DNA of 64,000 nt from Macrostomum lignano (Eukaryota): NCBI GenBank assembly GCA_002269645.1, contig NIVC01004013.1:738-64737 (forward strand). The letters run 5' to 3'. The notes under the pieces are model-generated. The model did not search any database. It saw only the letters and a list, made by a program, of their open reading frames with translations, and was not told where the DNA came from. This document shows, piece after piece, positions 1 through 18,895 of the stretch. Both the position numbers and the translations under genes were made by a program. Within the stretch, counting starts at the first letter, position 1, and the number at the start of each line of letters is the position of its first letter.

Positions 1-1460
1 ACTGGATAACTTCCTAATCCTAGATAAACTTTTATAGCCTTCAAATATTTCAAGAACAGGATGAGGAATGAACAATGAACATTAACACAACACAAAGAGC
101 AACATGGAACACAATATGATCATAAATCATGGAACAGTCGTGAATCAAATCAAATTTGCGTAATGCTAAATGAACAATCCGTTGCACAATCCAAGGTTGT
201 TAAGGAGTAGCAATCTAGTCATGAACGCAGATCGTTTTTCAACATCAGATCGGCATGCTCTAGACGGGTACTCCCGCACAAACCAGAGATTAATTTAAGT
301 GATAAATAGGGGGAGGCAGTACAATCGAGTCCTGAATAAGCTTGTCATAACTCATAACCCGCAACACAGGCAACAAACCAGGCTTCGAAAGCGTCTTTGT
401 TGCAGTATTACTGATTAACCGGTTAAAGCTTTTCTGATTCTTCGTCTTACCTTGTGCTGCGCTATCTCTCTGGATGACCGCGCTGGTTCTACGTGCAACG
501 CGGAGCGAGTAAGACAGTAAAACGAAGGCGTGCCCCTGCTTTACTTTTATGCGCTTGTGTCGGGTGGGTGAGGGCCCGTCCCCCAGATTGAATTAAAAAG
601 AGAGAATGGACTGAATGCTAGCAGAGGGCTGGGGGAGGAAGGGGCCAGTGCCGCTATGTACAGCGAGAAACTAAAATGACTCACTATATAACAAGCAGAG
701 ACGTTTAATACAACACGGGCGCGCTTTTAAGACCCCCACACCTCTTTATCAACCCAAACCTAATTTCAAGCTTCAAGCCATAGCAAGCAGGGTTTTCGGC
801 CTAACTTGAGGGGGACTGTCTGGAGAAGCACCCCTCACCCCAACACCCCAGCGAGCACCCCACCTCCAACTGACCAATTAGGCGGTCCGGATCGAAGTGT
901 GAGTTTTTCCGCCGGGCTGGAATTAACGTACATCGTTGTACATACACACCCTCAAGTCAGGCATTGCCGCTCTTTGGTTTTGTTTTCCTTTCAGATTGGA
1001 GAGGGGGGCTGGGTGACCCTTACCGGTGGATGCGCCTTGGACTGAGTTTTGTTTTCGATAGCAGCAGCACTTGTCCCGGCGCCCACAAATTCACCCACCC
1101 ACCTTCGTTTGGCCACCTACTGACACTGACCCACCCGTTTCTGCCACGGTTTCGCTCAGTGTCCACTACTAGGGCTAGGCTGCTGCCTGCTAGCTCTCGC
1201 CTCTCATTTAAGTTTTAGTCTTAAGTAATCTGGTAGCCTGGTAGTTGGTATTGGTATTGGTACGTTGTATCTTGTGTCTAGGGATTGCAATCCAGGAGTG
1301 CCGAATCTCGGGACAAATTTTTGTGTTCAATTTTGCAACACTGCTTCCGTTTTACGAGTTTGCTTGCTGCAAATGCTTGCTACAAGTTCCAGAGCATTAT
1401 TTTTGCATCAGTCCATCAACATTCGACCGAGTCTTGAAGGACATTTCTTAGTCTTGATAG

Positions 1461-2267
1461 TAGGGATGTCGACCCCGGGGAGTGCTCCCCGGGGCCCAGG
1501 GGAGCTTGTTGGGGAATACTCCCCGGGGAGTTGGACCGGGGACCCCGGGAAGAAAAAAAGCATTTTTAACTTATTTTTTGCCATTAAAATAAGAAAATGA
1601 TTCACTGAAAGCTGATTGAAACTCTGTCTATGCTTTTTTTTACCGCAAAGCTGCTTATTTAAATGTATTATTTCAAACACAACACACGTTTAAATGTTTT
1701 TTTCACTATTAGTCTTTCAATCAAGCAAATTGCACGTAGAAACCCGTCAGGAAAAAGAAGCCTTACTGACTACTGTGTTGGTCTGCGTTGACGGCCTGAC
1801 GCATTTGACGCAGGCACAGCGCTGCGTCCTGCGTCAGTCACTGACGCATAGGGGGTGTCATACAATAAAAAAATACTCCCTATTAGACAAGGACAAAATG
1901 GTGATTTATCGCAGAAATAAAAATTCCGATTATAACAGCAGTCTCATTCATTAATTATCCTCCCACGAGCACAGCTGCTGAGCATGCATTTTCCGCCTCC
2001 GGAGTCTGGACTCTTTCTGACAAAGGTGCGCGCACGATTTGGTGATGCCACGTTGTCAAATGCAGTTTTAAATAAACATTTTTTTAGAGTTTTTACCCTT
2101 GCGCCTTGAACACGTAGTCCAAAGCTTAAATCAAAGTTAAAAAATTCCACTTAAAAGTTATCCGCCGTATTTTACTTATTTTTTCTTTTCCTCGGAGTCC
2201 CCGGGGAACGACAGTAAATTCCCCGGGGTCCCCGATAAGAAAATTCCCCGGGGAATCGACATCCCTA
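1461..2267. mobile_element. hAT-type non-autonomous DNA transposon (MITE)
   Basis: Termini TAGGGATGTCGA (1461) and TCGACATCCCTA (to 2267) are inverted. The 8-bp TSD CTTGATAG is at 1453-1460 and 2268-2275. Subterminal CCCCGGGG motifs occur at both ends. No transposase ORF. Confidence 0.85.
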
Positions 2268-2286
2268 CTTGATAGTAATATGTAGG

Positions 2287-3413
2287 AGAGTTTTGCCAAT
2301 CCCGGGATTCTCGGGATCAGGATATCCCGGACTTTGCCAATCCCGGGATCCCGACCAATTAGGCCGGGACCCCTGGATCCCGGAGTTGAAAATTTTCTAA
2401 TCTTTGTTGGTGCAATTTTGGCTGTCGAAGGCGAAGCCATCGTTTAAGGGGCTTTCAATAACAAAGTAGAACAGAATAAAATATTTTGCAAAGAAGAAAC
2501 TGACAGTGAGCTCTGAATTGGAGTGTGATGTACGGGCTGGCGCAATAGACGCGCATTTTTACATTCAGCTCATGAAAATCACACTTCATGCCTGTGATGC
2601 AACCTGGGGAATGATAGCTTACAGAGCTATACACGTATGGCCTGAGGTACTGCTGGATACCTGGTTAGAAGGGGATTAGACCTCACCCTCCCAGGGGCAC
2701 CCGCCCTATAGATGGAGAATTGGTATATATGTAGCTTGGGTTGTGGGTGAGTGGTCCGATAGCAAGGTCGCACTATTCTAATCCCAACTACGGCCAAGGA
2801 GTTTTGAAAGTAGGGACTGCTTTAAGTACATGTAGTTCTGCCACCACTTCCTATGTGCTGGGCATCTAAATTGGGTATCCTGACAGTGCTGAGAATGTCT
2901 TTCGCATAGAGAGGGGCTTCTGATCTGCGCAAGGTCGAGAGTCGAGACCCCCTGGGCCCTGATTTTAGCTGGGTTTGAGATAGTGGGAGAGTTCAAATGA
3001 AAAATTATTTGACTCCCGTCTGGCAAGCGCCAGCGCTGTGATCGGAAACAATGAGGAATCGCCTTGCTGAATGCTGCGTTCACCAGCATAATTGGCTTCT
3101 ATTGCTTTAGGCTCTGTGTACAGGTTTTGGAATAATAATTACATTAGTCTGCGAGTACTTATGCATATAGTTGCACGTACATTATTACACCTGAAATCTT
3201 ACGATCTGCCAACAGCTTCAGTTTTATATCCCTGCAGCCCTATAGCCTTCTCACTAGCCTGCATGATTAAAAGATTAATAAATCAAAGCACGATTACGAT
3301 TTTCACCTGACAAGTGCCGGTAGCTCAGCTCAGCGGTAGGCCCAATTCGTCGGGATCCCTGGATTGGCAAAGTCCGGGATATCCTGATCCCGAGAATCCC
3401 GGGATCACAACTC
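2287..3413. mobile_element. Non-autonomous TIR element with long subterminal inverted repeats
   Basis: 2299-2343 is the exact reverse complement of 3361-3405 (45 bp), extending inward to about 67 bp with a few mismatches. ATCCCGGGAT motifs are repeated. Outer ends and TSD are not resolved. Confidence 0.65.
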
Positions 3414-4483
3414 ACATCAGAACTCCCCTCAAAACAAGTACCCTCTCTCTAACACCCTGTCTGTTTCCGTCTCATTTCCCCCGCCTGCACCTCCGCCTGA
3501 ATTCCCCTGTATCCCTGTCTTATTTTTCCAGTACCTCACTTCATCAGCAGCTATGTGTAGCAATTGTTCTTCAAAATCCGGGAATGAATAATTCAATTCT
3601 GGATCAAAAAAGCAGCAAATGTCAAAACAAATCAAAAGAAACGATTAACAAATGTGCATTGACGAAAAAGAACGGATTCCAAAGATGAAAATCCAGCTTT
3701 TGCCAGAGTATTTAACTCAGCTGCATCACCTTTCAAAAGCGCTGGAGCGAGATTTCACAGCTTAATGCATATTCAATATAGAGCTATAGTATGAAAGGTT
3801 TTGCAGATATTGTCAGAAAGATTGACAGACGGGTGAATGAGCGGAGGCCAGAGACAGCAACTCAAGATTGTAATAAGCTCTTATAGGGTCATTATAGAAA
3901 AGCATCCAAAAAGCCTCGAGAGCTCGGAGTTCTCTACCACCTTCTCTCCTAACTCTGTGAGCATGCATAGAGCAAGGGTCACTCTAAGGACACCTATATA
4001 CGAGCGTAGAGTAATTAAATTCGAGTATAATAGAAACGTATAAACGAGTTGGAGCAGATAATTTTGAGCAGCACTGAGCACTGATCTATTTGCACTGTAT
4101 GCTATATGCCATGGTGGTTGCGGTGGCCTATCCACTAGAGTAATCAGCCAAGCCTTGAGAGATTGTACAGAATAGAAAAAAAGTAATTTGGAAACAGGCC
4201 ATAGCAAGAAGTGGGTTGCATACAGGCGCTATCTTAAACCAGAAAAATATAAATGCTACGCTGTCTTTAATTATTCCAATTATTATACTCGTATAATGCA
4301 CCCCCAGCCGTCATCTATCAGCTAATTGGGGCAAGAGCTAGAGGCTGGGGCTGATGCATACAGTGGGTCTATGAGAATTTCCCGCAGGAAGTTTTCCCGC
4401 CGAGGTTCGCCCTCGCGTGCTTTTCCCGCAGCGATATTCTCCCGCAGCGAGTTTTCCCTCTGGAGGTTTTCCCCCTGTTGATT

Positions 4484-4782
4484 GCAGAAGGAAGTTGATG
4501 GCGAAAATTAGGAGACGGCAGGTTGGAGTCCTTTGGCCTTATTATGAAGAAGGTACAGGAATCGAGCAGCTGTCACGCCTGTCAGTGACTGGGCAGATTG
4601 AAGGAAAAAGAGACCATGGGAGGCAGGGCAACGAAAAATATTTCTGAAGAACCTGTCTCAATGGATGACATGAACAAGACTGGAAATACTCCACGCCTCA
4701 ATGGACCGTGCTTTGTGGAAGACTGTGGTCGCCATCGCCAACGTCCTCCGTCGATACATGTATGGCACCTTGAGAGAGAGAG
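4484..4782 (+). mobile_element. Degenerate 3' end of an RTE-clade LINE
   Basis: Frame-broken translation KLMAKIRRRQV...GIEQL...VTGQIEGKRDHGRQ...DRALWKTVV..ANV...GT resembles the RTE ORF2 C-terminus and is followed by a (GA)n tail. Confidence 0.6.
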
Positions 4783-5341
4783 AGGTAATGATAGAAGAAA
4801 CGATCCATATTCCCTACGCTAGTAGTACTGCCACTGCCCTTTTAATTTACTCATACGAGCGTACCGTCGAGTACCCTATCGTTCTTTTCAAAATAACGAA
4901 AAAAGGAGAAAGTATCGTTTGATACTATCATTAATAAGTCAGGCTATTTGAATGCTATTGCGTTGAAAAACGGAAATTCGATCGTAATTTATCTGTCTAC
5001 ATTAGCGTAACATACTACTTAGTAACTCATTATTTAGTAGACAGACACATTATAGGGCGCTTTAAATTTTAGAAGTTCTTTATTTTTAGCGTATTGAGCT
5101 GGTTTGTTTACTGCTGGACACTGGACTCACTACGATGCACGAAAAAATAGTGTCAGACACTGCTTCAGCGTAACATGATTTGGTGTGTAATAATCATATA
5201 TCATATTACGTGTTGGTAAATGGAAATTCATTAGGACACACGATTGCTCTTTTCACCTTATTGTTTTTATTGTTGTATTATTGAAGCTGTAAATCAAAGG
5301 CATCATCCCAAAAGCTACAGTTGCATTCCAGCTCTTGCCCC

Positions 5342-5860
5342 TCATTCTTTCTTTCCTTGCTGTCGGTGCTTTCTGGCGCGTCTCCGCTGAAACCGACGAT
5401 AAGCCCACGGAGCCATTGGCGTCTGTCCGGGCGTCCACAGACCGAGCCCTGCGACCCTGGCAGCGCTGGTGGCTGCTTTGTACCGCAAGTTGCAGGTGTT
5501 GTGGTAGCACCAGGCGTGTCCTTCGGCCAGCATCCGGTAGGCGATGTCGTCTTTAGCTAGACAGACAAATCCAAGTATTCGATGATAGGAATCCCGACCA
5601 GGTGAGATCACGCAGACTCGGGTACCGCGCGGCAGCCTGCTGGCCAGTGCTTTGCGAGAATCTCGTCCGTGAGCTTGGCTCAACTCCGGCGCGTCGATCT
5701 GCATCAGGCGGACACGAACCGACGCCCTGTCGCCGTCGTCGTTCGTCTCCGGGATGATGCGCAACGAGTCGCCGTCGTGCACCGATTTGACTCGGCCGCA
5801 CAGATACTTGGCTGAATTTTTGAGGCGATAAGATAATGATTTTGTTTTTACTGAGTTCAT
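5342..5860 (-). CDS. Stand-alone thermonuclease (staphylococcal/micrococcal nuclease, SNase family), 172 aa, no coding intron
   Basis: Motifs VHDGDS, VRLMQIDAPE, RDSYHRIL, AEGHAWCY and ARVAGLGLW..P.APWAYRR match single-domain bacterial/viral SNases. The catalytic D, D, R, D, E, R equivalents are retained. AATAAA lies on the minus strand at 5266-5271. Confidence 0.9.
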   Translation of the reverse strand: MNSVKTKSLSYRLKNSAKYLCGRVKSVHDGDSLRIIPETNDDGDRASVRVRLMQIDAPELSQAHGRDSRKALASRLPRGTRVCVISPGRDSYHRILGFVCLAKDDIAYRMLAEGHAWCYHNTCNLRYKAATSAARVAGLGLWTPGQTPMAPWAYRRFQRRRARKHRQQGKKE

Positions 5861-6225
5861 TCTGTCAATGAGTAGAGTTCCAATGAGTCAATATGCTTGG
5901 TTGGACAAGGTTATTGTTTGGTGAAACTAATTCACAACATCGAACAAATCACTAAATCAGTGATGCCCGAGCTACAAAGCGTCGAAAAGTGTGAATTATC
6001 CGTGTGATCGCGCTAAAATTGACTTTATTTTGATGGCGGTGTGAACGAGTCTATACTTAGAACTTAAGTAGCTTCCTGAGTAAATACTTGGAAGCACAAA
6101 GAGAGCACCCGGATGGGGTGTAGTTTCTCAGTGTTTTTAGTTGACTGGTCAGAGAAGTAATAGATTTGGGTCGGCTTGGTTCAGTCCAGAGCTTTACTTC
6201 GGTTCCGGCGCTTTAGTTGGCGTCC

Positions 6226-6233
6226 CTTTTATA
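6226..6233 (-). promoter_or_regulatory. Candidate TATA box (TATAAAAG) upstream of the nuclease gene
   Basis: The minus strand reads CTATAAAAGGG, about 370 bp upstream of the ATG. A 3' splice acceptor (TTGACAG|A ATG) lies 1 nt before the ATG. Confidence 0.4.
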
Positions 6234-6544
6234 GTTAGCTGCATGTAGTGATTTTAAATATAGCTTGTGTTTTAGGTGTCTTGACTTTTACGTTGTGGAA
6301 TGTTGAGTGAATATGTATGAATACTGAATAAATTCATATTCACTCATCTCTAATAGAATAGATGGAAACGTTTATGTCATAATTTCACCGAAGTTAACAG
6401 GCGATATTTTTATAGTGGAAGCTTTTGGTTTCATGAAATTCTGTGCTTCTGCTTTGTCCAGGTTCTTTAAAGGACCCAATTAAAAAATTTTCTATTTTAG
6501 TATATAGCATTTCGATAGAGCACCTAGCTATACAGTAAGACTCA

Positions 6545-6678
6545 CGATCAGTTGTGCAATTGACCCGGCCTTTGGCTTGGCGCCAGGAAATCTTCCGCCC
6601 AGTTGAAGCAGCCGCAGTGCTGCCTATGAATATAATCAGCAGCAGCACGGGAGCAGATGAGCACAGATAGGATGCCAT
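6545..6678 (-). CDS. Possible first exon of a small secreted protein
   Basis: MASYLCSSAPVLLLIIFIGSTAAA is signal-peptide-like, and a GTGAGT donor follows ...NCTTD. No downstream exon was found. Confidence 0.25.
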
Positions 6679-7253
6679 GCTTTTCTTTCACTGCTTCCGT
6701 TGTCAGTTAAAGAAATGATAAAATTTAATAGTTTTCTTTTAAGCTGAAATTTGGTATTTGGGCGAATCTTTCTTTCTTTATAAGTTCTTGAGATTGCTCT
6801 CGGCCCGAAGCCTCGGTGCGATCAAGCTTATAAACTGCATGAAACTATATGCTTGAACTTATCAGGTATGTTGCCAACTAGTTAGCCAGGCAGATAGTGA
6901 AATCTGCCGATAAAGATCTTAGCCTATGGCTATAGAAGTTCAGGCGTCGCAGATTCCTAGAAATTTTCTTGGAAATGCGCACGATTGTAAATGTGCAAAC
7001 GTGCAGCAGCACCTTGAATTTCCGTTGCGAACCAGTTCACTGTGGAGAGCATGCCATTTCAATTTTGCCGTTCCACACCCCGACAGATTTACGGCGCCTG
7101 TACGAACCCTCTTAGAAATAAAGAGTAAACATAACCAATGGGACCAACGAAGCTTAAATTCCAACCTTTAAATCTCGTGCATTCCAACATTATAAAGTTG
7201 GTTTTGAATTCAGTTGGACTTTAATTTAATTATGCAGTTACCTCGCTCTAAAA

Positions 7254-7430
7254 CAGGGGTTGGCAAACTTTTTTTAACTTAATAGTCAGATAGCGCATGA
7301 CTGCGGGCCAGGTGAGATAAGAGGAGAGAAGAGAGGAGAGGTGAGAGGAAGAGAGGAAGAGAGGAAGAGAGAGAGGAGAGAGGAGGGGAGAGAGGAGAGA
7401 GGGGAGATGAGAGAGGAGAGGAGAAAAAAG
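7254..7430 (+). mobile_element. hAT/Charlie-like left terminus followed by a GA-rich tract
   Basis: CAGGGGTTGGCAAAC at 7254-7268 is preceded by CTCTAAAA (Charlie-like target). (GAGAG)n-like sequence at about 7315-7430. Confidence 0.45.
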
Positions 7431-7873
7431 AAACGGAAACAAAATGAAATCCTCATCTTTTTCTGACGAGATGCATTCAAATCGGTGAAAAGATTTCATG
7501 TTTTGTTGGTTGATTTCTTACTCTGTTTGGTCAGCTCAGTTTTTCAGCTGAAATTTTTCTATAAGAGCCTTTGAATTTTTTGTCTTTAGGCTCTTATTGT
7601 AGAAAAATGCAGCCATACGCAGACATCGGCTGATCAGCCAATCAGAATCGGGGGATAGACTCCAGCGAAGGCTTGTCTCAGCTTAGCTGCATCCTAATAC
7701 AGAGCTGGCCAGAGCAATGGGCTTCTGGAAGCTGCCAGTGCCGTGAGTAGAGGCTGCAAAAGAAACGTGGCGATCCAACACGCGTGAACTACAAGTAATT
7801 ATAGCTGTCTTTGCAGAAGTTCAGTCAGAAATTTACTAACTATAAAAATCGAGTTAATCCAATTCGGCCTCAA

Positions 7874-8401
7874 ATGATTAGCAAGTGCTCAGTTTCCATC
7901 AATGACGCCCCAACCAAAGCCGAAGATCAACGTGAGCAGCAGCAGCAGCAGCAACAGCAGCAGACTCAGCAGCAGCGCCAGAGTCAGAGCCAGGGCACCA
8001 ATCAGGTCGTGGTGCCATGCCAGCAGCGACTCTGGCAGCTGGGCTCGGTCCTGTTATTCGTGCTTGGCCTAAGCGTCTTCATTCTGGCCTCGCTTCTTCT
8101 GTCTGTACGCACCGGCCTCGGACCAGACGGTACTAGCGCGAGCAGCCTGATGGCTAGCGGCTTTGCCAGTCTCACCGGCAGCTGCGCCATAATGCTAGTG
8201 GGGGCCGCATTCTGTGCTCTAGCAAAACGACGCGCAGAGTTTTCAATAGTTGCCAGGTGCTGTCACTGGTGTCTCAGCTGGTGCAGATGCTGCTGCTGCT
8301 GCTGCCGACCCGGCCAGACGTCCAGTTGGCGCGGCGGCGCTGCCGGTGGCGTCGGCGGCGAGTTCGGCAGCGTCTTTGACGACGGACCAACGGTTGCATA
8401 G
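7874..8401 (+). CDS. Small membrane protein with polyQ N-terminus, two TM helices and a Cys-rich tail
   Basis: The first ATG of the ORF is at 7874. Two hydrophobic segments (LGSVLLFVLGLSVFILASLLLSV; LMASGFASLTGSCAIMLVGAAFCAL) are followed by KRR and CCHWCLSWCRCCCCCC. Codon usage is GC-rich like the other genes. Confidence 0.6.
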   Translation: MISKCSVSINDAPTKAEDQREQQQQQQQQQTQQQRQSQSQGTNQVVVPCQQRLWQLGSVLLFVLGLSVFILASLLLSVRTGLGPDGTSASSLMASGFASLTGSCAIMLVGAAFCALAKRRAEFSIVARCCHWCLSWCRCCCCCCRPGQTSSWRGGAAGGVGGEFGSVFDDGPTVA

Positions 8402-9039
8402 CCCAGTTGAAGCACGAGCTGATCCCGCGGTCCCTCGGCATACTGAATCGGCAACAGGATATAATCGCATTCTTAATTCTATTCGCTAAAATCTGGGCTC
8501 TGTCACGCCGACTTGTGATTTTATCCATCGTTCTTTACTTCCACTCGGAGTGCCTTTCCTTGTGCACGATGTAAATAAGTGGTATATTTAGACAATAGGC
8601 ACCAGCGTTACTGCTATCAAATACCGTCTCAGCTATCATTGAAAGTGATTAAACCTGAGGATTTGTAGAAAATTATAATCCTGCCTATCTCTGCTGGCTA
8701 AGAAGTTTTTTGTTTTTTATATTAAATATATCTTGAGTTATTCCATGCTTAGACCATGTAATTTTGTCTAGCCCAGCAGAACAGAAATAGCCAGTCATGC
8801 AATAGTCACGCATGGTTAAATCAACTTGCTCATGGCTGCTTTCGTAAGACGGTTTTGAAACATACTCTTAACATAAATCACATTTGCAAACTGCACTGCA
8901 TGTGGTAACGACATTTGAAGTAGTAATTAGGCTAGAGATTTTGCACACATGCGGTCAGTCGAATGTCAAGAATAATACCGTATACCGATTCCGGGAGACG
9001 AGACCCCACTATGGGGTTGAAATTGATATTTGCATGACA

Positions 9040-9700
9040 TCGTTCCACAACTAGCGCTGACGGCAACTCTGCCCATTCCGCTGACTCCTAAGCACATGAA
9101 AATGCGCCAATACTGTACCGCAGTCGGGCTGTTTCAAGCAGTCGTTGAGACTGTCTCGTTGTACAACGCCGAGACCTGGACCTTGACGGACGCTTTGGAG
9201 AGGCAGCTGGACGCTGCGTATGCGGCCATGCTGCGTGCGGCGTTAGGAGTGCGCAACGGTCCAGGCAGCGAGACCAACGCCGCGCTCTACACGAGGGCAC
9301 GCCTGAAGCGGCCTTCTGACCTGCTGCTCGGGCGGCGACTTCGACTGGCTAGCCACGTAATCAGGTCGGAGGCTCGCCGCCTTGAGCCGCTGCACGAGGT
9401 GCTGCTGCTCAAGCTGCAGGGACCGCGTAGGCGAGGCCAAGGGCGAACGGCGAGATGTCCTGACAGGCTTTCGACGGATGCTGGCGCCCCGGACCAAGCT
9501 GGGGGGTGTGACTTTCTGAGGGCTATGGCCCAGAGACGCACTCGCTGACTTCTCCCCCTATCTGGCCACTGCATGGCTGGCAGGTAAAGTACTTTGTTGT
9601 TGTTGTTGTTGTACCGCAGGCACGCACTCATACACTCGCTCACACAGGGTGTACAGCGGCACTGACTTTCCAATCGTCAGGCATGCCCTCATGATTGTGA
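9040..9700 (-). mobile_element. Headless SINE-family copy split by a LINE insertion
   Basis: 9050-9123 and 9620-9690 align with 28330-28505, 34805-34935 and the reverse complement of 25930-26040 (e.g. GCCCATTCCGCTGACTCC, GTGTACAGCGG, TCAGGCATG). Confidence 0.6.
9124..9610 (+). mobile_element. 5'-truncated RTE/RTE-X-like LINE, copy 1
   Basis: LFQAVVETVSLYNAETWTL...RRLRLASHVIR...GPRRRG; (TTG)n tail; TSD (T)GTACCGCAG at 9114-9123 and 9610-9619. Confidence 0.85.
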
Positions 9701-9830
9701 ATCTCACAACCGTTGGCTAACTTTTCGTGCACAAGCCCCAATGTGACAAAGTCAAGGCTGCTAGACAATGTAGACAAGGATGCTATCTGACAAAGTTCAT
9801 TTTGAAGCACTTTAACAGAACGTACTTGTC

Positions 9831-11093
9831 CTGGCGACGAGCTCAGCCTTTAGCCGCATTCCGGAGTTATCAAGGGACTCCGACTTCGAAGTTTACATTG
9901 AGAGACTCGAACAATACTTCGTATGCGCTAAAGTCACTGAGGAGCCCACCAAAGTGGCCACACTTTGCACTGCCATAGGAGAAACCGCCTACACGGTGCT
10001 TCGCAACCTATGTCAGCCGGACAAGGTTTCAGAAAGGTCATACGACGGCCTAAAGAAAATTCTGCAAGACCATTACGCTCCCGCGCCATCCGAGATCGCC
10101 GCATGCTTCAAGTTCCAGCAGAGAATGCAATTGCCGGGAGAGGACTTCGCCACCTTCCTGGCAGGGCTGAAGGCAGCCACTCTGCACTGCAACTTCGGCA
10201 CGGCGCTGGAGGAGAGACTGCGAGACCAGGCCGTCTTCGGTCTCAGGAACGATGCCATCCGCTCAAAGCTGCTGGAAATCTCAAAGCTGACTTACGCCCT
10301 GATGGTCGCGACGGTGTCATCGATGGAGGCAGCGCAGCGCTACGCGAGCGAGATCGCGCCCAGAACACTGGAGACCGCCGCAGCGATCAGCAAGGATGTT
10401 GGCAGCGGACAGACGCGTAAGCACGAGAGGCCGCAGCTCCTGACTCGCTGCTTAGCGTCGCCGCACCCACACCAGCAGCAGCCGTGCGCCAGCTGCGGTG
10501 GCCGTCACGATCGACAAAGCTGCAAATTCCGCGATGCCAAGTGCCACGCCTGCGAGAAGACAGGCCACATCCAGAATGTTTGCAGGTCAGCCAGGGTCAA
10601 GCAACTGGACTCCGCTGCAGCTGCGTCGGACCAGGACAGTGACAGCCAGGGCTCGATCCTCTACGTCGGATCTCGATCGTCCCGATCCTTGACGGTCACT
10701 TTGGAGGTGGACGGTCGCGACTGCCCGTTCGAGCTGGACACTGGATCAGCCGTCACGCTGATCCCAAAGAAAATGGCGGATGAGCGGCTCCCAGGACTGC
10801 GTCTACAGCCAACGGCGATGGTGTTACGCACATACACCAACGAGCAGTTCAAGCCGCTAGGTGAAGCCAGAGTCGCTGTCAGTCACAATGGCCAGAAGGC
10901 AATCCTCCCGCTGCTCGTGGTCTCCCAGGGCAGTGTCCCTCTCCTAGGACGAGACTGGATGGCTCGACTAAAACTGGACTGTCACGCAATCATGGCTCAG
11001 GTCAACTCAGTCAGCACCAGCTCTGACACCACTGACCTAACGCAGCAGCCACACCGCGGTTTTTCAAGGCCAGGCCGGTCCCGTACGCTCTGA
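9831..11093 (+). pseudogene. gag: gag-protease frame
   Basis: The frame is open from the TAA at 9813: ...DFEVYIERLEQYF...IGETAYTVLRNLC...RLRDQAVFG; CASCGGRHDRQSC and CHACEKTGHIQNVC knuckles; protease ELDTGS. Confidence 0.88.
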
Positions 11094-11101
11094 GGGAGCG
11101 G

Positions 11102-11821
11102 GTGAACGAGGAGCTGAGACGACTTAAGACCCAAGGCATCATCACGCCCATCAAGCACTCAGACTGGGCGGCTCCCATTGTCCCGGTAGTGAAGGCGAAC
11201 GGCGAGATCGAGGACATCTTCGCCAAGCTCGGCGGAGGCTGCAAGTGGACAAAGCTCGACTTGTCCAACGCATTTCTACAGCTGCCGCTGTCCGAGGAGA
11301 GCCGGGCCTAATTGGTATTGGTCATCAACACGCCGCGAGGTCTGTTTCAGCTCAACAGACTGCCCTTCCGCATCAAATCAGCCAGCGCCATCTTTCAGCG
11401 CACACTGGAGACGCTGTTGGGTGACCACGACGGCGTCCACCTGTTCGTGGACGACATTCTCATCACGGGCAAGACTCAGGTGCAGCACAGACAGAACCTG
11501 ACCAGCGTGCTGCAGCGTCTCCAGGAAGCCGGCCTTCGACTGAACAGGTCCAAGTGCCTGTTCTTTCAAGACTCCGTCGAGTACCTCAGTCAACACTCCG
11601 TCGATTACCTCGGTCATCAAATCGACGCGCATGGCCTGAAGCCTCTGCCAGACAAGGTCGCAGCGGTGCAGAACGCGCCGGCACCAAAAGACGTTAGCCA
11701 GCTGCGCGCCTTCCTCGGCATGCTGACCCACTACTCGAAGTTCATGCCGCACCTGTCTGCGGTAGTGGCGCCAGCTGCTGAACCAGCTGCTGACCAAGAA
11801 CACCAAGTGGTTCTGGGGTGA
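11102..11821 (+). pseudogene. pol: Reverse transcriptase, disrupted
   Basis: WAAPIVPVVK, LDLSNAFLQL, RLPF.IKSASAIFQR, FVDDILI, YLGH. The RICGDY segment is missing, there is a stop/frameshift at about 11311, and a 24-bp tandem duplication (SVEYLSQHSVDYLGH). Confidence 0.88.
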
Positions 11822-11879
11822 CGCGCAGCAGCGAGCATTCGAGCAGTCCAAGCAACTGCTGCTGTCCTCGGGCGCTCTC

Positions 11880-13405
11880 GTGCACTACAACCCAGACTTG
11901 TCACTGTACCTGGAGTGCGACGCCTCGCGATTCGGTCTGGGGGTGGTCCTGTCGCACAAGATCGGCGGCCAGAGGCAGGCGATTGCCTTCGCGAGTCGCA
12001 GCCTGACCCCGCTCAGCGCAACTATGCGCAGCTGGACGAAGAGGCGCTCGCCATCATGTTCGGCCTGCACCGGTTCCACCAGTTCCTGTACGGGAGGCAC
12101 TTTGTCATCGTGACGGACCACCAGCACCTACTTGGACTGCTTGGTGAGCGCAAGGCCATCCCGGCACACGCCGCAGCTCGCATGCAGCGCTGGGCCATCC
12201 GGCTCTCCAGCTACGACTACAGCCTGGAGTTCAGACGAACGGCGCGGCACGGCAACTGCGACTCGCTCTCTCGCCTTCCGCTCGGCACCCAGTTCATCGA
12301 GGAGCCAGCTGTGAACTGCCTCCTCATCGACGAAGATGTCGGTTCGGCCCTGACGGCAAAGGTGATTTCTTCTTCTTCTTCTTCTTCGGGCGTGCTCGGG
12401 CCAGGGCCCATGGCACCGGGCGTCAGATGGCGCCCGCCTTCCCGAGGAAGTTCAACACCGCGACGCAGTTCTCGAAAACTGCCGCGGGCTCCGGGCTTGG
12501 CCCCCAGAGGCGGCAGCGGTGTGATGTCAGGGCGGGGCAGGAGATCAGCAGATGGGCCGCCTCTGCGAAAGGTGATTTCGCAGAGGACGCGGACGGACGC
12601 GCAGCTCGGCAGAGTGCTGCTGTGTCTGCAGTCGGGCGCCCGGATCCCAGCTGCAGGGGGCCTCAAAGCGTTCTCTGGCCGACAGCACGAGCTGAACATC
12701 GAGCAGGGCTGCCTGCTTTGGGGGTCCAGAGTCATCGTTCCGTCCGCCCTCCGCTCGAAGGTCCTCAGCGAACTGCACCAGGCCCACCCTGAAGCCAGCC
12801 GCATGCGGGCGCTCGCTCGCAGCTACGTGTGGTGGCCCGGCCTGGACAAGGACGTGGAGGACTCCGTCAAGGCGTGCGAAACCTGCCGGCTCAACCAGGC
12901 CGATCCGCCCAAGGCGCCTGTGCACCCGTGGCCCTTCCCATCGGAGCCGTGGTCCCGGCTACACATCGACTTCGCTGGCCCTGTCGACGGCCGCACCTTC
13001 CTGGTGCTTATCGACGCGCACAGTAAGTGGCCGGAGGTAAAGCAGCTGACCAGCACGACGTCAGGCGCGACCATCAACTGCCTTCGCGAGATCTTCGCGC
13101 GCCAGGGTCTACCTCGGACTCCGGTGTCTGACAACGGAGCTCAGTTCACGTCATCCGAATTCAGCGAGTTCCTGCGTCTCAACGGCATCGAGCATGTGAC
13201 TTCAGCTCCGTTTCATCCTGCGACCAACGGGCAAGCCGAACGGTTCGTCAAGGTGCTGAAGCAGCACCTAAAGAAATCGGGACTGTCAGAGAGCTCTGCA
13301 GCAGCTCCTACTCGCCTATCGCAACACGCTGCATTCGGCCACAGGCGCAGCTCCCAGCCAGCTGCTCTACTGCTCTACGACTCCGATCTCGGCTGGACCT
13401 GCTGA
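11880..13405 (+). pseudogene. pol: RNase H - integrase, disrupted
   Basis: LECDASRFGLG, NYAQLDEEALAI, TDHQHL, RMQRWA; zinc-binding LHQAHP...CETC; catalytic HIDFAGP, VSDNG, AERFV. Confidence 0.88.
12370..12567 (-). mobile_element. 5'-truncated LINE 3' end with (GAA)n tail, nested antisense in Gypsy pol
   Basis: 12-bp TSD AAAGGTGATTTC at 12358-12369 and 12568-12579. The minus strand reads AEAAHLLISCPALTSHRCRLWG...VLNFLGKAGAI-stop, then a short UTR and (GAA)6. Confidence 0.85.
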
Positions 13406-13947
13406 CGCCATCGCTCGTCAGCAACCGTCACCGGCAGCAGGAGGCAGCGCTCCAGCAGTCGCCAAGACCGACCAGGACGTTTGCCGAGACCGGCGACCTG
13501 CCAGCGGCCCACCAGGACGGCTCTTCCGACGGAAACCTGGCGCCCGGCCCCGGGCCTGGCGATGGCATTGTGAAGCCTGCGGCGGGCTCGCCGGCCCGGC
13601 GGTACCCCGAGCGAGCCAGGGTACCTCCTGACCGACTTCGACTCGGCTGAGCACCAGCCTGAGGGGGGAGATGTCCTGGCCTGGGCTGCGGACCCTCCGC
13701 AGCAGGGCCAGTATGCGTTCTCCCACTGACTAAGCAGCACCGATTGTTCCCCTCACTGACTCACCCGTGTCACCCCTACTGCACGCTCTCCATTGCTTCA
13801 TGCTACGCATCCCCTGTACGTGTTCGTACCACAGCACGCCTATACGGTTCGGGCCCCAGAGCCCAGAAATATAACGGCAAACACGACCCCCTCGGTCTCT
13901 CCACGTTTTTACTGACTGCCTGCCTGCTCACGGGATCCGCTCCCAGG

Positions 13948-14363
13948 GGGGTGCTTTCACAAGGTCGAAACTTCACAAGGTCGAAATTTCACAACATCGA
14001 AAACTTTAGCAAGAGACTTCATAAGGTCGAAATTTTACGAGGTCGAAATTTCACAACATCGAAAACTCTAGCAGAATACCTCATAAGGTCGAAATTTCCC
14101 AAGGTCGAAATTTCACAACATCGAAAACTCGAAAAGCAGCCACTTTCATAAGGTCGAAATTTCACAAGGTTGAAATTTCATAACATCGAAACTCAAACTT
14201 GTGAAAGTGGCTGCTATTTGAGTTTTCGACCTTGTGAAATTTCGACCTTATGAAGTCTCTTGCTAAAGTTTTCGATGTTGTGAAATTTCTACCTTATGAA
14301 ATTTCGACCTTATGAAGGAGGGTGCTTTCGACGTTGTGAAATTTCGAGTTTGTGAAACCCCCC
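13948..14363. mobile_element. Foldback-like MITE made of internally repeated TIRs
   Basis: AAGGTCGAAATTTCACAA units run forward in 13955-14195 and inverted in 14195-14360. G-run/C-run termini; candidate 8-bp TSD CTCCCAGG at 13940-13947 and 14364-14371. Confidence 0.75.
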
Positions 14364-16142
14364 CTCCCAGGCAGAGCTTTGGACTAAACGTCAAGACTTA
14401 CTTCTAAGTCATTACAGTACTCGTACTATATAGAAAACCAAAGCCGTCTGTTGAGATTATTTATTATAGCTCGTAGCTCAGCCCGCTATCAGTCCTCAGA
14501 AGTTACGAACCGTATTCTATGGCGGATTACAGAAAAGCGAATTCTGTGACACATTGATTGTCCCTCCCCAGTCATCTGCTCAATCGCCAATAGATATTAA
14601 ACTCAGCACTGCATCTATTGCTCGGAAGTAATGCCTTGACAAAAAATTGTAACTTCCAGCACTTTAGCGCAATATAGTATAGGTGGATTATTAGTTTTCG
14701 TGACTTGAGTTTCCTTGTTGACAAATGGATAAGCTTCTTTTTAGTCTGCAAAATTGCACGACTTGCGTGAGTGGAAAACAAATGAATCTGAATAAATGCA
14801 ATAGACCTATAAACCTGCGACGAGCGATTCGAAATCAGCCCTAATTAGAGACACTCGGAGACAGACAAACGAGCGCAGCAAAGTGCCGATTACTAACTGA
14901 TTACCATGCACTTGTGCGAGCTCTTTGCGTGCAAGTGCCCGGCCTTATTGACGTGCGTCGGGTAACTGAAATATGCGGGGCCCAAGGAGAGGCCCGTGCA
15001 GCTGCTTTGCCGCGCTGCTTTGCGGAAGAAAAAAAACGAGGGTAGTTAAGAGGAGGAGGTTGAGTTGAAGATAAGCCGATAGCGGGAGAGAAGGCTTAAT
15101 TGTACCGGGACTAAGTGCCTAGAAAGAGCGGGAGGCAACCGGGAAGGGAGAATGTGGTGAGAGGAATTATGGGGCTATATACTGGGTCCATAGTGAGATA
15201 AATCAGCCGGAGAGGCCCGAGCAGGCACGCCGGGTGTGAGCAGCGGGCGGAAGCCTTTGGCCAAGGTGGTGCCGAACATGCGGCCAATATTGCCCCGCCC
15301 TCCACGGGACGCAAAGTGAGTGCGGGAGAAGAAAAAAGGGAATTAGGAATACGCGATCCTAGTGGAGAGGGAGATAGCGCTGAAAATGGGAAATAGAAAC
15401 GAAAGAACGCAGGAAGGAAAGATGGACGAACGTAAAAAAAATGGCGCGGGAAAGAACCAGCGTGAGTGCCCGAGGCTCTGCTCCCCTGGGAGGGGGCGAA
15501 TGAGTGCTGGAATTCGCGGGCTGCGGAGTAAGGCGCGTAGTTTGGCTGAGCAGCGAGATGGATGCCTGCCGTCCTTTTATCATTGCGCCCTTGCAGTTCG
15601 TATTTATAAACACACTTGCCGGACTGTACTGCTTGCAGGTCTGTCAGCAAACTATCGATTTGGCTAACTTAAAGCCCTAGTTTATAACCGACATCGAAAA
15701 GTCAAGGCTGGGTTTCTGTGGAAAATTTATGATGGCTTATGCTTTCCGGTAATTTACATCTTTTGCGTAATCTTTTAAACTGGGGCGCAAAGCCTATCCG
15801 ATAAAAAACAATATTTTTCAGATACATCCTTGATAAAAACAGAAAGAAAGTTTATGCAGATCAAGAAACTAGTTAATGGCACGACCTCAACTTGCTACTT
15901 AAAGTAGAAAACTGAGGGTAGAGCCATCCCAATGCAGAAATAGTGAGTGAGTGAGAGGAACAGTGGGTTGGAGGGGAGAAAATCCGGTTGCCTAAGCAAC
16001 CGCAGTATTTATCAGGCAATAAAAGACTGTCAGATTACTATTTAACTACTTGCTGCTCCGGTACCAGCTTCCCATTGCTTATCAAATTGACTTGGAAACT
16101 CCAATTGAAGCAACACTGTTTCTCGTGCACTGCAATCGCCAG

Positions 16143-17249
16143 ATGAAAAAACTCCAAATCGTTGCCTTCTGGTCGCTTCTAGCGTGTGCTACCACTGTAT
16201 CAGCCTTAGAGAGTCAAGGTGAGAGCTAAACTCCATTACTGTTACGACTGGTATGTTATGATGCGGTACGGTACTTGTAACAACGACTCATCAACTTATA
16301 TAGACTTTAATACCGATTGTCGTAGAGTTTTCTACCGAGCCCGCTGAGCCGTTGGACGCCACGGCTGCGCTGACATCGGCACCAGGCCGCAGCGATACGC
16401 ACTGCGCCATTCAGTGCGCTGCAGCCGGACGCAGCGCCTGCTCTGCCACTGCTTTCGTATCGGGCTCGCGGCTCTGCCTTTTCTCTGCTGCCAGGAATGC
16501 GGACTTTGCCGCGACTGCTCCTGGAAGCCTCGTGTATCGAATCCGCTGGAAAGGTAATGATAGATCATTATACCAGAAAATACTTTCTTACATTTATACT
16601 TATTGCTTATTAGTAAATATTGGGCTCATGAAACCGGTGACAGATCTACCGGATGGAGTCATGCTGATTCGAACTGGCGCCAGTCTGAGCTTCGCCAGGA
16701 GCTGGTCCGAGTACGAAAACGGATTCGGCAACGAGGTCGACGGTTGGATGGGTGAGCAGTTCTGCAGAATGCTAACTATCTAAGATTTTAACTGAGTGAA
16801 TTACTGTGTTTGCCAATTGTCATTCAGGTCTGCGAAAAATCCACGAACTGACTGGAAACACGCCCAGGCGCCTGAGAGTGGAAGCTGTCACCTGGTCGAA
16901 TGTGTTGTACGTCTGCGAGTACTCCGGCTTCTCCGTGGGAAACGCCAGCACTAACTACACGATGACCTTCGACAAGTATCTGTCCGGCAGCTCCAACACG
17001 ACATCTGACTCTCTATTTTATCACAAGGGGATGCAGTTTTCCACAATGGACAGAGACAATGATCAGCATAGTTCTGTATTCTGCTCTTCTTCGGGAGGCA
17101 ATGGTGGTTGGTGGTTCAAATCCTGCTCGCATTGCAACCCAAACGGAATCTACTTTGCTACTCGATCTTCCTCTCTTGGAAGATGCTATTGGAATGGCGC
17201 TGATGGAAGCTACTCGCTGAAAAGCATCAAACTACTGCTGGTTGTCTAA
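16143..17249 (+). CDS. Secreted PAN/apple-like + fibrinogen-related domain (FReD) protein, 277 aa
   Basis: Exons 16143-16218, 16326-16553, 16644-16751 and 16828-17249 have GT-AG introns with compatible phases (834 nt). Signal peptide MKKLQIVAFWSLLACATTVSA; HCAIQC...C...F...CL module; FReD motifs FARSWSEYENGFG, WMGL, FSTMDRDND, GGWWFKSC..CNPNGIY. Confidence 0.85.
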
Positions 17250-17544
17250 GTCAAAAACTTTTTGTTTTAACCATGAGATGACAGAAACAAAGTACAGTTA
17301 GGATTAGCTACAACTCTCAATTTTTAAGAGATCCGTTTATGATGGTAGATATTAATCGAAAAAATAAACAACAACTTAGCTGCAACTATAAAACTGATGG
17401 CGGGCATGGTTTGAAAACTGATTCGTTACGTTCCGCATCCCTGAAATATAATATACTTTTTGTCAGAAACTTCCTCTTCTATTTTCCAACGGCTATCTAC
17501 CATGGCACCTAAAGTAGTAGGACGCTATACTCGCTCAACCGACG

Positions 17545-17900
<356 letters not shown>

Positions 17901-18334: not shown

Positions 18335-18343
18335 GATAGACAG

Positions 18344-18394
<51 letters not shown>

Positions 18395-18403
18395 GATAGA
18401 TAC

Positions 18404-18463
<60 letters not shown>

Positions 18464-18833: not shown

Positions 18834-18895
<62 letters not shown>

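What the first reader, a model, noticed from the sequence alone, without database searches (positions are those of the whole stretch)
5260..6240. Bacterial/viral-type stand-alone thermonuclease apparently domesticated in an animal genome
Seen: an intact 172-aa single-domain SNase with DGD, RLxxIDAPE, DxYxR and GLW...PW.YR motifs, no signal peptide, a basic C-tail (RRRARKHR, possible NLS) and no coding intron. It has a minus-strand TATAAAAG at 6226-6233, a splice acceptor 1 nt before the ATG and AATAAA about 70 nt after the stop. Established: animals normally carry SNase folds only as degenerate repeats in Tudor-SN/SND1; stand-alone forms are typical of bacteria, plasmids, phages and large DNA viruses, with LCL3/CAN in fungi and plants. 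Inference: a horizontally acquired, host-expressed Ca2+-dependent nuclease that could act in antiviral defence, DNA digestion or cell death. This is the best candidate here for an undescribed system.
Basis: partly seen in the sequence, partly recalled or inferred. Interest (0 to 1): 0.8.

Follow-up and report, generated by a model that had tools for sequence, protein, structure and literature searches.

The report
Bacterial-type secreted nuclease gene in flatworm
The flatworm Macrostomum lignano carries a working-looking bacterial-type staphylococcal nuclease gene that has gained an intron and a secretion-signal exon and belongs to a small flatworm gene family, so it is a likely old gene transfer from bacteria rather than a new kind of system.

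Summary
The ORF and its motifs are real, but the 172-aa intronless, leaderless protein is a single-ORF reading artefact. The window is Macrostomum lignano contig NIVC01004013.1. The gene is already annotated there (BOX15_Mlig022653g4, "TNase-like domain-containing protein", 200 aa) from RNA-seq-based models.

The CDS has two exons: 6678..6546 (signal peptide plus Cys linker) and 5811..5342 (SNase domain). They are separated by a 734-nt GTGAGT...CAG phase-1 intron.

The fold and all catalytic/Ca2+ residues of staphylococcal nuclease are retained. M. lignano has at least three diverged paralogue groups (41–47% identity). They share the intron position and phase, a signal-peptide exon and extra cysteines. 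This implies one old acquisition followed by duplication.

The nearest non-flatworm relatives are bacterial (Burkholderiales and others) and phage proteins at no more than about 47% identity. No other eukaryote appeared among the best hits. Contamination and transposon cargo are effectively excluded.

The most likely product is a secreted, disulfide-stabilised, Ca2+-dependent extracellular nuclease. A digestive or extracellular-DNA role is inferred, not shown. The horizontal-transfer idea is supported. The nuclear, antiviral or cell-death idea is not.

The parts
6546..6678 (-). Exon 1, coding part. ATG at 6678. Encodes the hydrophobic signal peptide (about residues 1-24, window 6607..6678) and a linker with a conserved Cys (NCTTD). 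It ends in phase 1.
   Evidence: The joined exons translate exactly to annotated protein P0002. The hydrophobic core scores KD9 = 3.5. The linker is homologous to that of paralogue P0029.
5812..6545 (-). Spliceosomal intron, 734 nt, GTGAGT...TTCAG, 37% GC.
   Evidence: Searches give the sequence. The same phase-1 position occurs in both paralogue groups. The paralogue introns have no in-frame Met. TATAAAAG is at chance level.
5342..5811 (-). Exon 2, coding part, including the TGA stop at 5342..5344. Encodes the whole SNase domain (Pfam match 5432..5716) and the basic C-terminal helix.
   Evidence: Pfam PF00565. A family profile hits S. aureus thermonuclease in the PDB at E~1e-20. The AF2 model has pLDDT 84.6, above 90 across the domain. 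Foldseek TM-scores to staphylococcal nuclease are 0.72-0.82.
5266..5271 (-). AATAAA, 71 nt downstream of the stop. A plausible poly(A) signal.
   Evidence: Only the motif is shown; its use is not.
6777..6782 (-). TATAAA about 100 nt upstream of the exon-1 ATG. A possible core promoter element. This is a sequence observation only.
   Evidence: It was not tested against chance or transcripts.

Best explanation
This is a two-exon Macrostomum lignano gene (Mlig022653). It encodes a secreted, single-domain staphylococcal-nuclease-type (thermonuclease/YncB-family) enzyme.

The gene descends from a bacterial or phage SNase gene acquired by an ancestor of M. lignano. After acquisition, a spliceosomal phase-1 intron came to separate a eukaryotic signal-peptide/linker exon from the nuclease exon. 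This boundary is exactly where bacterial homologues pass from export signal to mature domain. The protein gained cysteines suited to disulfide bonds. The gene then duplicated into at least three diverged paralogue groups, each present in several near-identical genomic copies.

How it most likely works (inferred from homology):
- The pre-protein enters the ER through the exon-1 leader.
- The mature protein of about 175 residues is exported.
- It binds Ca2+ through Asp59, Asp84 and the backbone of Ala85.
- It cleaves DNA and RNA non-specifically, using Arg79, Glu87 and Arg122. The basic C-terminal helix probably helps binding to nucleic acid.

The most likely role is extracellular. Candidates are digestion or scavenging of nucleic acids from diatom and bacterial food in the gut lumen, or clearing extracellular or biofilm DNA at the body surface. 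This last step is speculative; I put digestion at about 0.35.
For: Shown by tools:
- The window is identical to GenBank NIVC01004013.1 of M. lignano.
- The joined exons equal annotated P0002, with canonical GTGAGT/CAG splice sites.
- GC is 54% in exon 1 and 60% in exon 2, against 37% in the intron.
- GenBank models of this assembly derive from RNA-seq/transcript assemblies, not ab initio prediction (PMC5730564).
- A hydrophobic leader is present only in the spliced product, as in the bacterial homologues.
- Pfam SNase match. The profile hits S. aureus thermonuclease at 1e-20, with D21/R35/D40/E43/Y85/R87 equivalents present.
- The SNase fold is predicted with high confidence.
- Paralogues P0029 (47% identity) and P0030 (41%) are M. 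lignano proteins on other large scaffolds.
- All three groups share a phase-1 intron three residues after the linker Cys, with GTGAGT donors.
- Flatworm paralogues score 125-145 bits against each other. No single non-flatworm domain exceeds 79 bits.
- Catalytic residues are conserved 6/6 in flatworm sequences. Cys49, Cys111 and Cys146 are 6/6 in flatworm sequences against at most 2% of 362 others.
- The nearest named non-flatworm relatives are bacterial: Alcaligenaceae/Pusillimonas, Limnohabitans, Neisseriaceae, Melainabacteria and Planctomycetota at 30-47% identity. Others are phage.
- The locus lies among animal genes. It is duplicated with more than 17 kb of flanks at 99.6% identity.
- GC and GC3 of the nuclease exon lie within the range of host ORFs.
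Against: - I could not inspect RNA-seq reads. Transcript support is indirect and rests on how the annotation was built.
- No dedicated signal-peptide predictor was available. A short N-terminal membrane anchor is not excluded.
- My NJ tree of 368 domains was unresolved, with about 0/200 bootstrap support. The donor lineage and strict monophyly of the flatworm clade therefore rest on HMMER scores and rare shared characters, not on a supported tree.
- By raw p-distance, a phage protein (P0079) is as near to paralogue P0030 as the other flatworm paralogues are.
- Most top hits are unnamed metagenome proteins.
- Coverage of other flatworms in the databases is unknown, so 'absent from other animals' is an absence of hits, not a demonstration.
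- One of the three locus copies carries indels in both exons.
- Enzyme activity, Ca2+ dependence, secretion and tissue of expression are all inferred.
Confidence: 0.8

Rival explanations
1. An intronless, leaderless 172-aa nuclease is translated from ATG 5860, possibly after trans-splicing at the AG just upstream or transcription from the TATAAAAG at 6233. The basic tail takes it to the nucleus, where it acts in antiviral defence or cell death. It could also exist as a minor alternative isoform.
For: The ORF is open from 5860 and an AG sits 1 nt upstream. About 39% of M. lignano genes are trans-spliced (PMC5730564). The C-terminus is very basic.
Against: - ATG 5860 and the TATA lie in the intron of the transcript-derived model.
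- TATAAAAG is at chance frequency.
- Neither paralogue group has an in-frame Met upstream of its acceptor.
- The 17 extra residues match nothing in the homologues.
- The basic tail is shared with exported bacterial homologues.
- The flatworm-specific cysteines suggest an oxidising, extracellular setting.
Confidence: 0.06
2. Ancient eukaryotic gene. This would be a vertically inherited stand-alone SNase, of the fungal LCL3 / plant CAN kind, retained in Macrostomum and lost in most other animals.
For: Stand-alone SNases do exist in fungi and plants (established knowledge). The gene has an intron, a eukaryotic leader and host-like composition. Database coverage of early-branching flatworms is unknown.
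Against: - Among the best 150 of 10,731 hits in 1.84 billion representatives, and the best 120 of the profile search, every named non-Macrostomum hit is bacterial. The contigs I inspected are bacterial or phage.
- The flatworm proteins carry the motif of the bacterial subfamily, VxSVHDGD[TS], which found 199 bacterial genome loci.
- No fungal, plant or other animal protein was returned as a named hit.
Confidence: 0.08
3. Contaminant or assembly chimera. A bacterial or phage fragment was mis-joined to flatworm DNA.
For: The nearest relatives are prokaryotic. The exon is GC-rich against AT-richer flanks.
Against: - The gene has a spliceosomal intron with canonical sites.
- The same locus sits on three contigs, including a 500-kb scaffold, with 98-99.6% identity running many kb into both flanks.
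- Animal genes lie on the same contig.
- A UniRef model that is not among the GenBank proteins of this assembly, and so is probably from another gene set, uses the same exon 1 and the same acceptor.
- No bacterial sequence is more than about 47% identical.
- Two further paralogue groups with the same intron lie on 354-kb and 608-kb scaffolds.
Confidence: 0.01
4. Cargo of a transposon or endogenous virus, with copy number due to transposition.
For: A Ty3/gypsy-type retroelement remnant lies about 3.3 kb away at 9954..13405. The gene occurs in several copies.
Against: - No LTR or TIR pair brackets the gene within 1..20000.
- The copies share their flanks over 7 to more than 17 kb, retroelement included. 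They are therefore segmental, homeologous or allelic duplicates, not insertions at new sites.
- The gene lies outside the retroelement and on the opposite strand.
- The paralogue groups are 41-47% identical with introns of different lengths, which fits old duplications.
Confidence: 0.02
5. Transferred but non-functional. A decaying relic that is transcribed only incidentally.
For: One copy (Mlig022653g1, L003) has two indel events in exon 1 and one in exon 2, and a truncated model. I found no expression-pattern or phenotype data.
Against: - Two copies are intact and identical.
- Three paralogue groups that have diverged to 41-47% identity all keep open frames, splice sites, leaders, every catalytic and Ca2+ residue, and five shared cysteines. 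That pattern is not expected without purifying selection.
- Long-read indel errors could explain the broken copy.
Confidence: 0.04

Closest known systems
Bacterial exported thermonucleases of the YncB / 'micrococcal nuclease' type (COG1525; Pfam SNase PF00565), e.g. Alcaligenaceae/Pusillimonas 'thermonuclease family protein'
   Same: Both are single SNase domains of about 140 residues placed directly after an N-terminal export signal. They share the motifs SVHDGD, IDAPEL, DxYxR, GLW and PWxxR and a basic C-terminus. They are 40-47% identical over the domain.
   Different: The flatworm gene has a spliceosomal intron at the leader/domain boundary and a eukaryotic-style leader with a Cys-containing linker. 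It has five conserved cysteines that are nearly absent from 362 prokaryotic and phage domains. It has host-like GC3 and a downstream AATAAA, and it lies in an animal chromosome.
Staphylococcus aureus nuclease A (thermonuclease Nuc)
   Same: Same fold (Foldseek TM-score 0.72-0.82). Equivalents of Asp21, Arg35, Asp40, Glu43, Tyr85 and Arg87 are all present.
   Different: Identity over the structural alignment is only 15-18%. The Thr41 position is Ala, as in 94% of this subfamily; by established knowledge that ligand is a backbone carbonyl. The flatworm protein has extra cysteines and a long basic C-terminal helix.
Tudor-SN / SND1 (the usual animal carrier of SNase folds)
   Same: SN-like OB-fold domains. 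SND1 chains are among the top structural matches.
   Different: SND1 has four to five tandem SN domains plus a Tudor domain. The canonical staphylococcal catalytic set is degenerate in its domains (established knowledge). Here there is one 200-aa protein with the full catalytic set, no Tudor domain and a secretory leader.
Fungal LCL3 and plant CAN1/CAN2 stand-alone SNases
   Same: They are eukaryotic single-domain, Ca2+-dependent SNase-type nucleases (established knowledge).
   Different: No such protein came back as a named hit among the best 120-150 matches. By established knowledge they are membrane-anchored rather than signal-peptide plus Cys-rich. A direct comparison could not be made here.
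Phage SNase-type endonucleases (PHROG phrog_452)
   Same: Same domain. The flatworm proteins match phrog_452 at E = 2.6e-11 to 5.8e-16. Forty phage-like contigs carry the subfamily at up to 40% identity. One phage protein (P0079) is among the nearest to paralogue P0030.
   Different: The phage versions lack the leader, the intron and the cysteine set.

Membership tests
SNase / thermonuclease family (Pfam PF00565) | Match to the family HMM above the curated cut-off | tested here: met
   47.5 bits against a cut-off of 21, E=2.8e-12, covering profile positions 1-106 of 107.
SNase / thermonuclease family (Pfam PF00565) | OB-fold beta-barrel plus three helices, as in staphylococcal nuclease | tested here: met
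   The AF2 model has mean pLDDT 84.6, above 90 over residues 46-200. Foldseek gives probability 1.00 and TM-scores 0.72-0.82 to S. aureus nuclease structures. This is a prediction, not a solved structure.
SNase / thermonuclease family (Pfam PF00565) | Ca2+ ligands (Asp21, Asp40, Thr41 backbone) and catalytic Arg35, Glu43, Arg87 | tested here: met
   The profile-to-PDB alignment maps them to D59, D84, A85, R79, E87 and R122 of P0002. All are conserved in 6/6 flatworm sequences and in 94-100% of 362 relatives.
SNase / thermonuclease family (Pfam PF00565) | Ca2+-dependent hydrolysis of DNA and RNA | not testable with these tools
   Inferred from the conserved residues only.
Exported (secreted) bacterial-type thermonucleases | N-terminal export signal immediately before the domain | tested here: met
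   Exon 1 encodes a hydrophobic core (KD9 3.5) followed by small residues (AAAS). The bacterial homologues score 2.4-3.1. Both paralogue groups also have such leaders. This is a heuristic test, because no SignalP-type tool was available.
Horizontally acquired, domesticated gene in an animal | Physically integrated among host genes, and not a contaminant contig | tested here: met
   The same contig carries PDZ/ZU5, PID and Vitellogenin_N genes. The locus is also on a 500-kb scaffold with 99.6% identical flanks.
Horizontally acquired, domesticated gene in an animal | Eukaryotic gene features acquired (spliceosomal intron, host-like composition, poly(A) signal) | tested here: met
   A 734-nt GT-AG intron is conserved in position and phase in the paralogues. 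GC3 is 0.67, within the host range of 0.64-0.82. AATAAA lies 71 nt after the stop.
Horizontally acquired, domesticated gene in an animal | Closest relatives outside the recipient lineage are prokaryotic or viral, with a supported phylogeny | tested here: inconclusive
   All named best hits are bacterial or phage. However, the NJ tree has no bootstrap support and many hits are unnamed.
Horizontally acquired, domesticated gene in an animal | Absent from related animals outside the recipient clade | tested here: inconclusive
   No other eukaryote appears among the best 120-150 hits of two exhaustive searches. Coverage of other Macrostomum species and other flatworms in those databases is unknown.
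Horizontally acquired, domesticated gene in an animal | Transcribed and correctly spliced in the host | tested here: inconclusive
   The GenBank CDS comes from a transcript-based annotation pipeline (PMC5730564), and its splice sites check out. I could not view the reads.
Tudor-SN / SND1 | Tandem SN domains plus a Tudor domain | tested here: not met
   There is one SNase stretch in 200 aa and no Tudor match.
Fungal LCL3 / plant CAN stand-alone SNases | Closer in sequence to LCL3/CAN than to bacterial SNases | not tested
   No LCL3 or CAN protein was returned as a named hit. I could not fetch them by name, so no direct comparison was made.

The most novel reading that the evidence does not exclude
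A single ancient transfer of a bacterial or phage thermonuclease gene into the Macrostomum lineage founded an animal-specific family of secreted, disulfide-stabilised nucleases. The family has at least three paralogue groups, each in several copies, and the worm uses them outside its cells, for example to digest nucleic acids of its food or to clear extracellular or biofilm DNA. This would be one of very few documented functional bacterium-to-flatworm transfers, and a rare case of an animal using a catalytically active stand-alone SNase.
Probability: 0.65. Interest if true: 0.5.

Novelty: new member of a known kind. Interest (0 to 1): 0.42.

Why it matters
Animals are generally thought to carry SNase folds only in Tudor-SN. 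This flatworm, a model for regeneration and sexual selection, has a catalytically intact, exported, bacterial-type SNase family. The domestication route is clear: an intron lies exactly at the leader/domain boundary, the export signal has been replaced by a eukaryotic one, cysteines have been added, and the gene has expanded into a family.

That makes it a compact case study of how a prokaryotic secreted enzyme is refitted for the eukaryotic secretory pathway. It also adds Platyhelminthes to the animal groups with candidate functional horizontal transfers. I found no paper describing it.

It is not a new kind of system. The enzyme family, the mode of action and the phenomenon of transfer followed by domestication are all well known, and the gene is already auto-annotated as TNase-like.

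Tried and rejected
- A single-sequence PDB search returned only spurious beta-trefoil design hits. A family profile was needed to recover thermonuclease.
- An NJ phylogeny of 368 domains over 134 columns with 200 bootstraps was unresolved, so I use it only for nearest-neighbour lists.
- P0214 and P0031 looked like possible eukaryotic relatives because of their high scores. They are bacterial tandem double-SNases with lipoprotein-type leaders on gene-dense contigs, and their scores are inflated by having two domains.
- P0079 looked like an exon fragment. It lies on a phage-like contig.
- P0176 shares a 90% cluster with a paralogue but is not an SNase, so I dropped it.
- P0001, a UniRef model, reads exon 1 out of frame from a weaker GT donor 21 nt upstream and has no start codon. 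I judge it a prediction artefact.
- Text and supplement searches for the six Mlig transcript names in four papers found nothing.
- Two cluster look-ups meant to name more top hits returned mostly unnamed metagenome entries.
- The search for LTRs or TIRs around the gene found only simple repeats.
- In the large alignment, columns C128 and C151 were misaligned. For those two cysteines I rely on the flatworm-only alignment.
- dN/dS was not attempted. The copies are either identical or too diverged (41-47% amino-acid identity) to be informative.
Full report
**1. What is in the sequence**

The minus-strand ORF 5342..5860 (172 aa) exists as described. It matches Pfam SNase PF00565 over the whole model (E=2.8e-12, 47.5 bits against a cut-off of 21). 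NCBIfam gives only weak sub-threshold matches to the EcnA and NucI thermonuclease models. TATAAAAG occurs twice in the window against 2.06 expected by chance, so it carries no weight.

**2. Whose genome, and what the gene model is**

The protein search returned three Macrostomum lignano entries at 99-100% identity. The next hits were metagenomic 'endonuclease YncB (thermonuclease family)' proteins at no more than 39%.

- The window is 100% identical over 16.7 kb to GenBank NIVC01004013.1, assembly GCA_002269645.1.
- The annotated protein BOX15_Mlig022653g4 (P0002) has 200 aa, not 172. Its N-terminus comes from the upstream ORF 6394..6678.
- In the window, ATG 6678 opens an exon that ends ...ACT GAT C followed by GTGAGT. 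The intron ends ...TTCAG at 5812. Exon 2 starts CC AAG TAT at 5811.
- Joining 6678..6546 to 5811..5342 gives 603 nt, which translate exactly to P0002.
- GC is 54% in exon 1, 37% in the 734-nt intron and 60% in exon 2.
- GenBank models for this assembly were derived from RNA-seq/StringTie/TACO transcripts and a de novo transcriptome, with ORFs called by TransDecoder (PMC5730564). The splice therefore has transcript support, although I could not see the reads.
- A second public model, UniRef P0001, uses the same acceptor. It reads exon 1 in another frame from a weaker GT donor and has no start codon. I regard it as a prediction artefact.

**3. Leader or no leader**

The spliced product begins with a hydrophobic core (Kyte-Doolittle 9-residue maximum 3.5 at residues 11-19) followed by small residues. 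The bacterial homologues have comparable leaders (2.4-3.1). The unspliced ORF reaches only 0.42.

The intron lies where bacterial homologues pass from export signal to mature domain, just before the G[RK]VxSVHDGD block.

ATG 5860 and the 16 codons after it lie in the 3' end of the intron. Neither paralogue group has an in-frame Met in the equivalent position. The 172-aa protein is therefore most likely an artefact of reading the longest ORF.

It is basic in many exported bacterial homologues too. In the model it is a confident helix (residues 179-199, pLDDT 93-97).

**4. The enzyme**

- A profile of the protein and 25 relatives hits S. aureus thermonuclease structures at E about 1e-20.
- That alignment maps Asp21, Arg35, Asp40, Thr41, Glu43, Tyr85 and Arg87 to D59, R79, D84, A85, E87, Y120 and R122 of P0002.
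- These residues are present in all six flatworm sequences and in 94-100% of 362 relatives.
- The AlphaFold model has pLDDT above 90 across residues 46-200 and below 50 across the leader and linker.
- Foldseek matches staphylococcal nuclease with TM-scores 0.72-0.82 and probability 1.00. SND1 SN domains are also among the top hits.
- Ca2+-dependent, sugar-non-specific cleavage is inferred from this conservation and is not shown.

**5. A gene family, not a singleton**

The exhaustive search of 1.84 billion representatives found 10,731 relatives. The closest are two further M. lignano groups:

- P0029 and relatives (Mlig008456/013652, 47% identity, E=8e-45). The alignment starts at residue 9, so it includes the exon-1 product.
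- P0030 and relatives (Mlig018861/002410, 41% identity, E=1e-32).

These lie on 608-kb, 354-kb and other large scaffolds.

Both groups have two coding exons with a GTGAGT donor and a phase-1 intron three residues after a conserved linker cysteine (NCxxx|). The introns are 3319 and 3536 nt, against 734 nt here.

With exon-2 parts as queries, the flatworm groups score 125-145 bits against each other. No single non-flatworm domain exceeds 79 bits.

Five cysteines in the domain are invariant among the flatworm paralogues (C49, C111, C128, C146, C151). Three of these columns could be scored cleanly in the big alignment. They are Cys in 6/6 flatworm sequences and in at most 2% of 362 others. With the linker cysteine, the mature protein has six cysteines, which fits a disulfide-bonded extracellular protein.

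Shared intron position and phase, the shared leader exon, the shared cysteines and the mutual best scores argue for one acquisition followed by duplication. Retention of every catalytic residue at 41-47% identity argues for purifying selection.

**6. Copies of this locus**

The window copy and the copy on the 500-kb scaffold NIVC01000568.1 are identical across both exons and the intron. They are 99.6% identical over more than 17 kb, including the neighbouring retroelement.

A third copy, on NIVC01001516.1 (Mlig022653g1), is 98.3% identical over 7.4 kb. It has two substitutions and two indel events in exon 1, and two substitutions and one indel event in exon 2, and its model is truncated. It is either decaying or carries long-read indel errors.

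The window holds only one SNase gene.

**7. Origin**

- In 185,579 bacterial and archaeal species genomes, 199 loci encode relatives that carry the subfamily motif. The best are 30-43% identical: Alcaligenaceae, Limnohabitans and other Burkholderiales, Neisseriaceae, Campylobacter, Melainabacteria/Obscuribacterales, Planctomycetota and Verrucomicrobiota.
- Named protein hits include thermonuclease family proteins of Pusillimonas and Alcaligenaceae at 42-44% identity.
- Forty IMG/VR contigs carry the subfamily at up to 40% identity.
- One near neighbour, P0079, lies on a gene-dense phage-like contig.
- The flatworm proteins match PHROG phrog_452 'endonuclease'.
- No eukaryote other than M. lignano appears among the best 120-150 hits.
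- My NJ tree gave no bootstrap support at this depth. The donor cannot be narrowed beyond 'bacterium or its phage', and the transfer direction rests on distribution, not on a supported tree.
- The absence of any sequence more than about 47% identical, the intron, the paralogue divergence and the host-like GC3 (0.67, against 0.64-0.82 for host ORFs on this contig) all point to an old event.

**8. Rivals**

- Contamination or chimera is contradicted by the intron, the three contigs with long shared flanks, the animal genes on the contig (PDZ/ZU5, PID, Vitellogenin_N) and the paralogues on large scaffolds.
- Transposon or virus cargo is contradicted by the absence of flanking LTRs or TIRs and by copies that share their whole neighbourhood.
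- Vertical descent with massive loss cannot be excluded formally. LCL3 and CAN proteins could not be fetched for direct comparison, and flatworm coverage of the databases is unknown. Nothing returned supports it.
- A leaderless isoform cannot be excluded without reads, but it is not conserved in the paralogues.

**9. How it most likely works**

Steps that are shown:
- a two-exon gene
- a leader-like N-terminus
- an intact SNase active site
- family expansion
- prokaryotic or phage nearest relatives

Steps that are inferred:
- co-translational entry into the ER and cleavage around residue 24
- disulfide formation
- secretion
- Ca2+-dependent non-specific cleavage of DNA and RNA outside the cell

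The biological role is a guess. The worm eats diatoms and lives in biofilm-rich sand (own knowledge). Digestion or scavenging of nucleic acids in the gut lumen is therefore the most economical idea (about 0.35). Degradation of extracellular or biofilm DNA at the surface, or a role in secretions of the reproductive tract, are alternatives. I found no expression-pattern data for any of the six transcript clusters.

**10. Novelty and verdict**

The enzyme family, its mechanism and the phenomenon of transfer followed by domestication are well known. The gene is already auto-annotated as a TNase-like protein. What appears undescribed in the held literature is that a flatworm has a multigene family of exported, catalytically intact, bacterial-type SNases with a clean domestication signature. 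I rate it a new member of a known kind, of moderate interest. Its gene anatomy, and the intracellular functions drawn from it, do not.

Noticed in passing
window 9954-13405 (+): This is a Ty3/gypsy-type retroelement remnant with gag/aspartic protease, an RT fragment, and RNase H plus integrase (Pfam RVP, RT_RNaseH, Integrase_H2C2, rve). Its coding capacity is split over at least three ORFs in different frames, so it has at least two frame interruptions. No LTR pair of 40 nt or more was found within 1-20000. It is shared by the duplicate locus on NIVC01000568.1.
   Followed up: partly
window, throughout (e.g. 57641-59814, 39983-41746, 24813-25760, 29453-30010, 17546-17899): The window is unusually dense in micro- and minisatellite arrays. 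Tandem Repeats Finder gives 62 rows, including a 38-nt unit repeated 57 times and a 29-nt unit repeated 60 times. Many of the long 'ORFs' in the window are just translated repeats.
   Followed up: no
window 54609-54681 (+): A tRNA-Ala (anticodon AGC) gene lies in an AT-rich stretch (Rfam 54.2 bits; ARAGORN).
   Followed up: partly
window 23243-24817 (+), 26137-26661 (+), 34957-35943 (-), 61405-61857 (+): These are host gene exons: PDZ domains and a weak ZU5 match (possibly one scaffold-type gene), a PTB/PID-domain protein, and a Vitellogenin_N / large-lipid-transfer N-terminus. They establish the animal context. Their exon structures were not worked out.
   Followed up: partly
window 7811-8401 (+): A 196-aa ORF runs divergently about 1.1 kb from the SNase start. 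It has a poly-Gln run, a hydrophobic segment and a Cys-rich C-terminus, and has no Pfam match. It may be an exon of the neighbouring gene.
   Followed up: no
protein P0180 (UniRef A0A1I8GL13, 1918 aa, M. lignano): This public model is named as a GPCR-domain protein but contains a paralogue SNase domain (139 bits to this gene's exon-2 part). It is probably a merged gene prediction.
   Followed up: no
proteins P0031-P0036, P0042, P0191, P0197, P0214 (metagenome/Logan): Some bacterial relatives have two to four tandem SNase domains in one exported or lipoprotein-type polypeptide. Their summed scores mimic close relatedness to the flatworm proteins.
   Followed up: partly
L128 10001-10390 (Logan SRR26065815 contig, 18.6 kb): A phage-like contig encodes a leaderless 129-aa SNase next to an AAA protein, a radical-SAM-like protein and a split family-A DNA polymerase. 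It is among the nearest non-flatworm sequences to paralogue P0030.
   Followed up: partly
L003 (NIVC01001516.1), copy Mlig022653g1: The third copy of this SNase locus has three indel events within its coding exons, and its model is truncated and frame-shifted (P0003). I could not tell whether this is real decay or long-read assembly error.
   Followed up: partly
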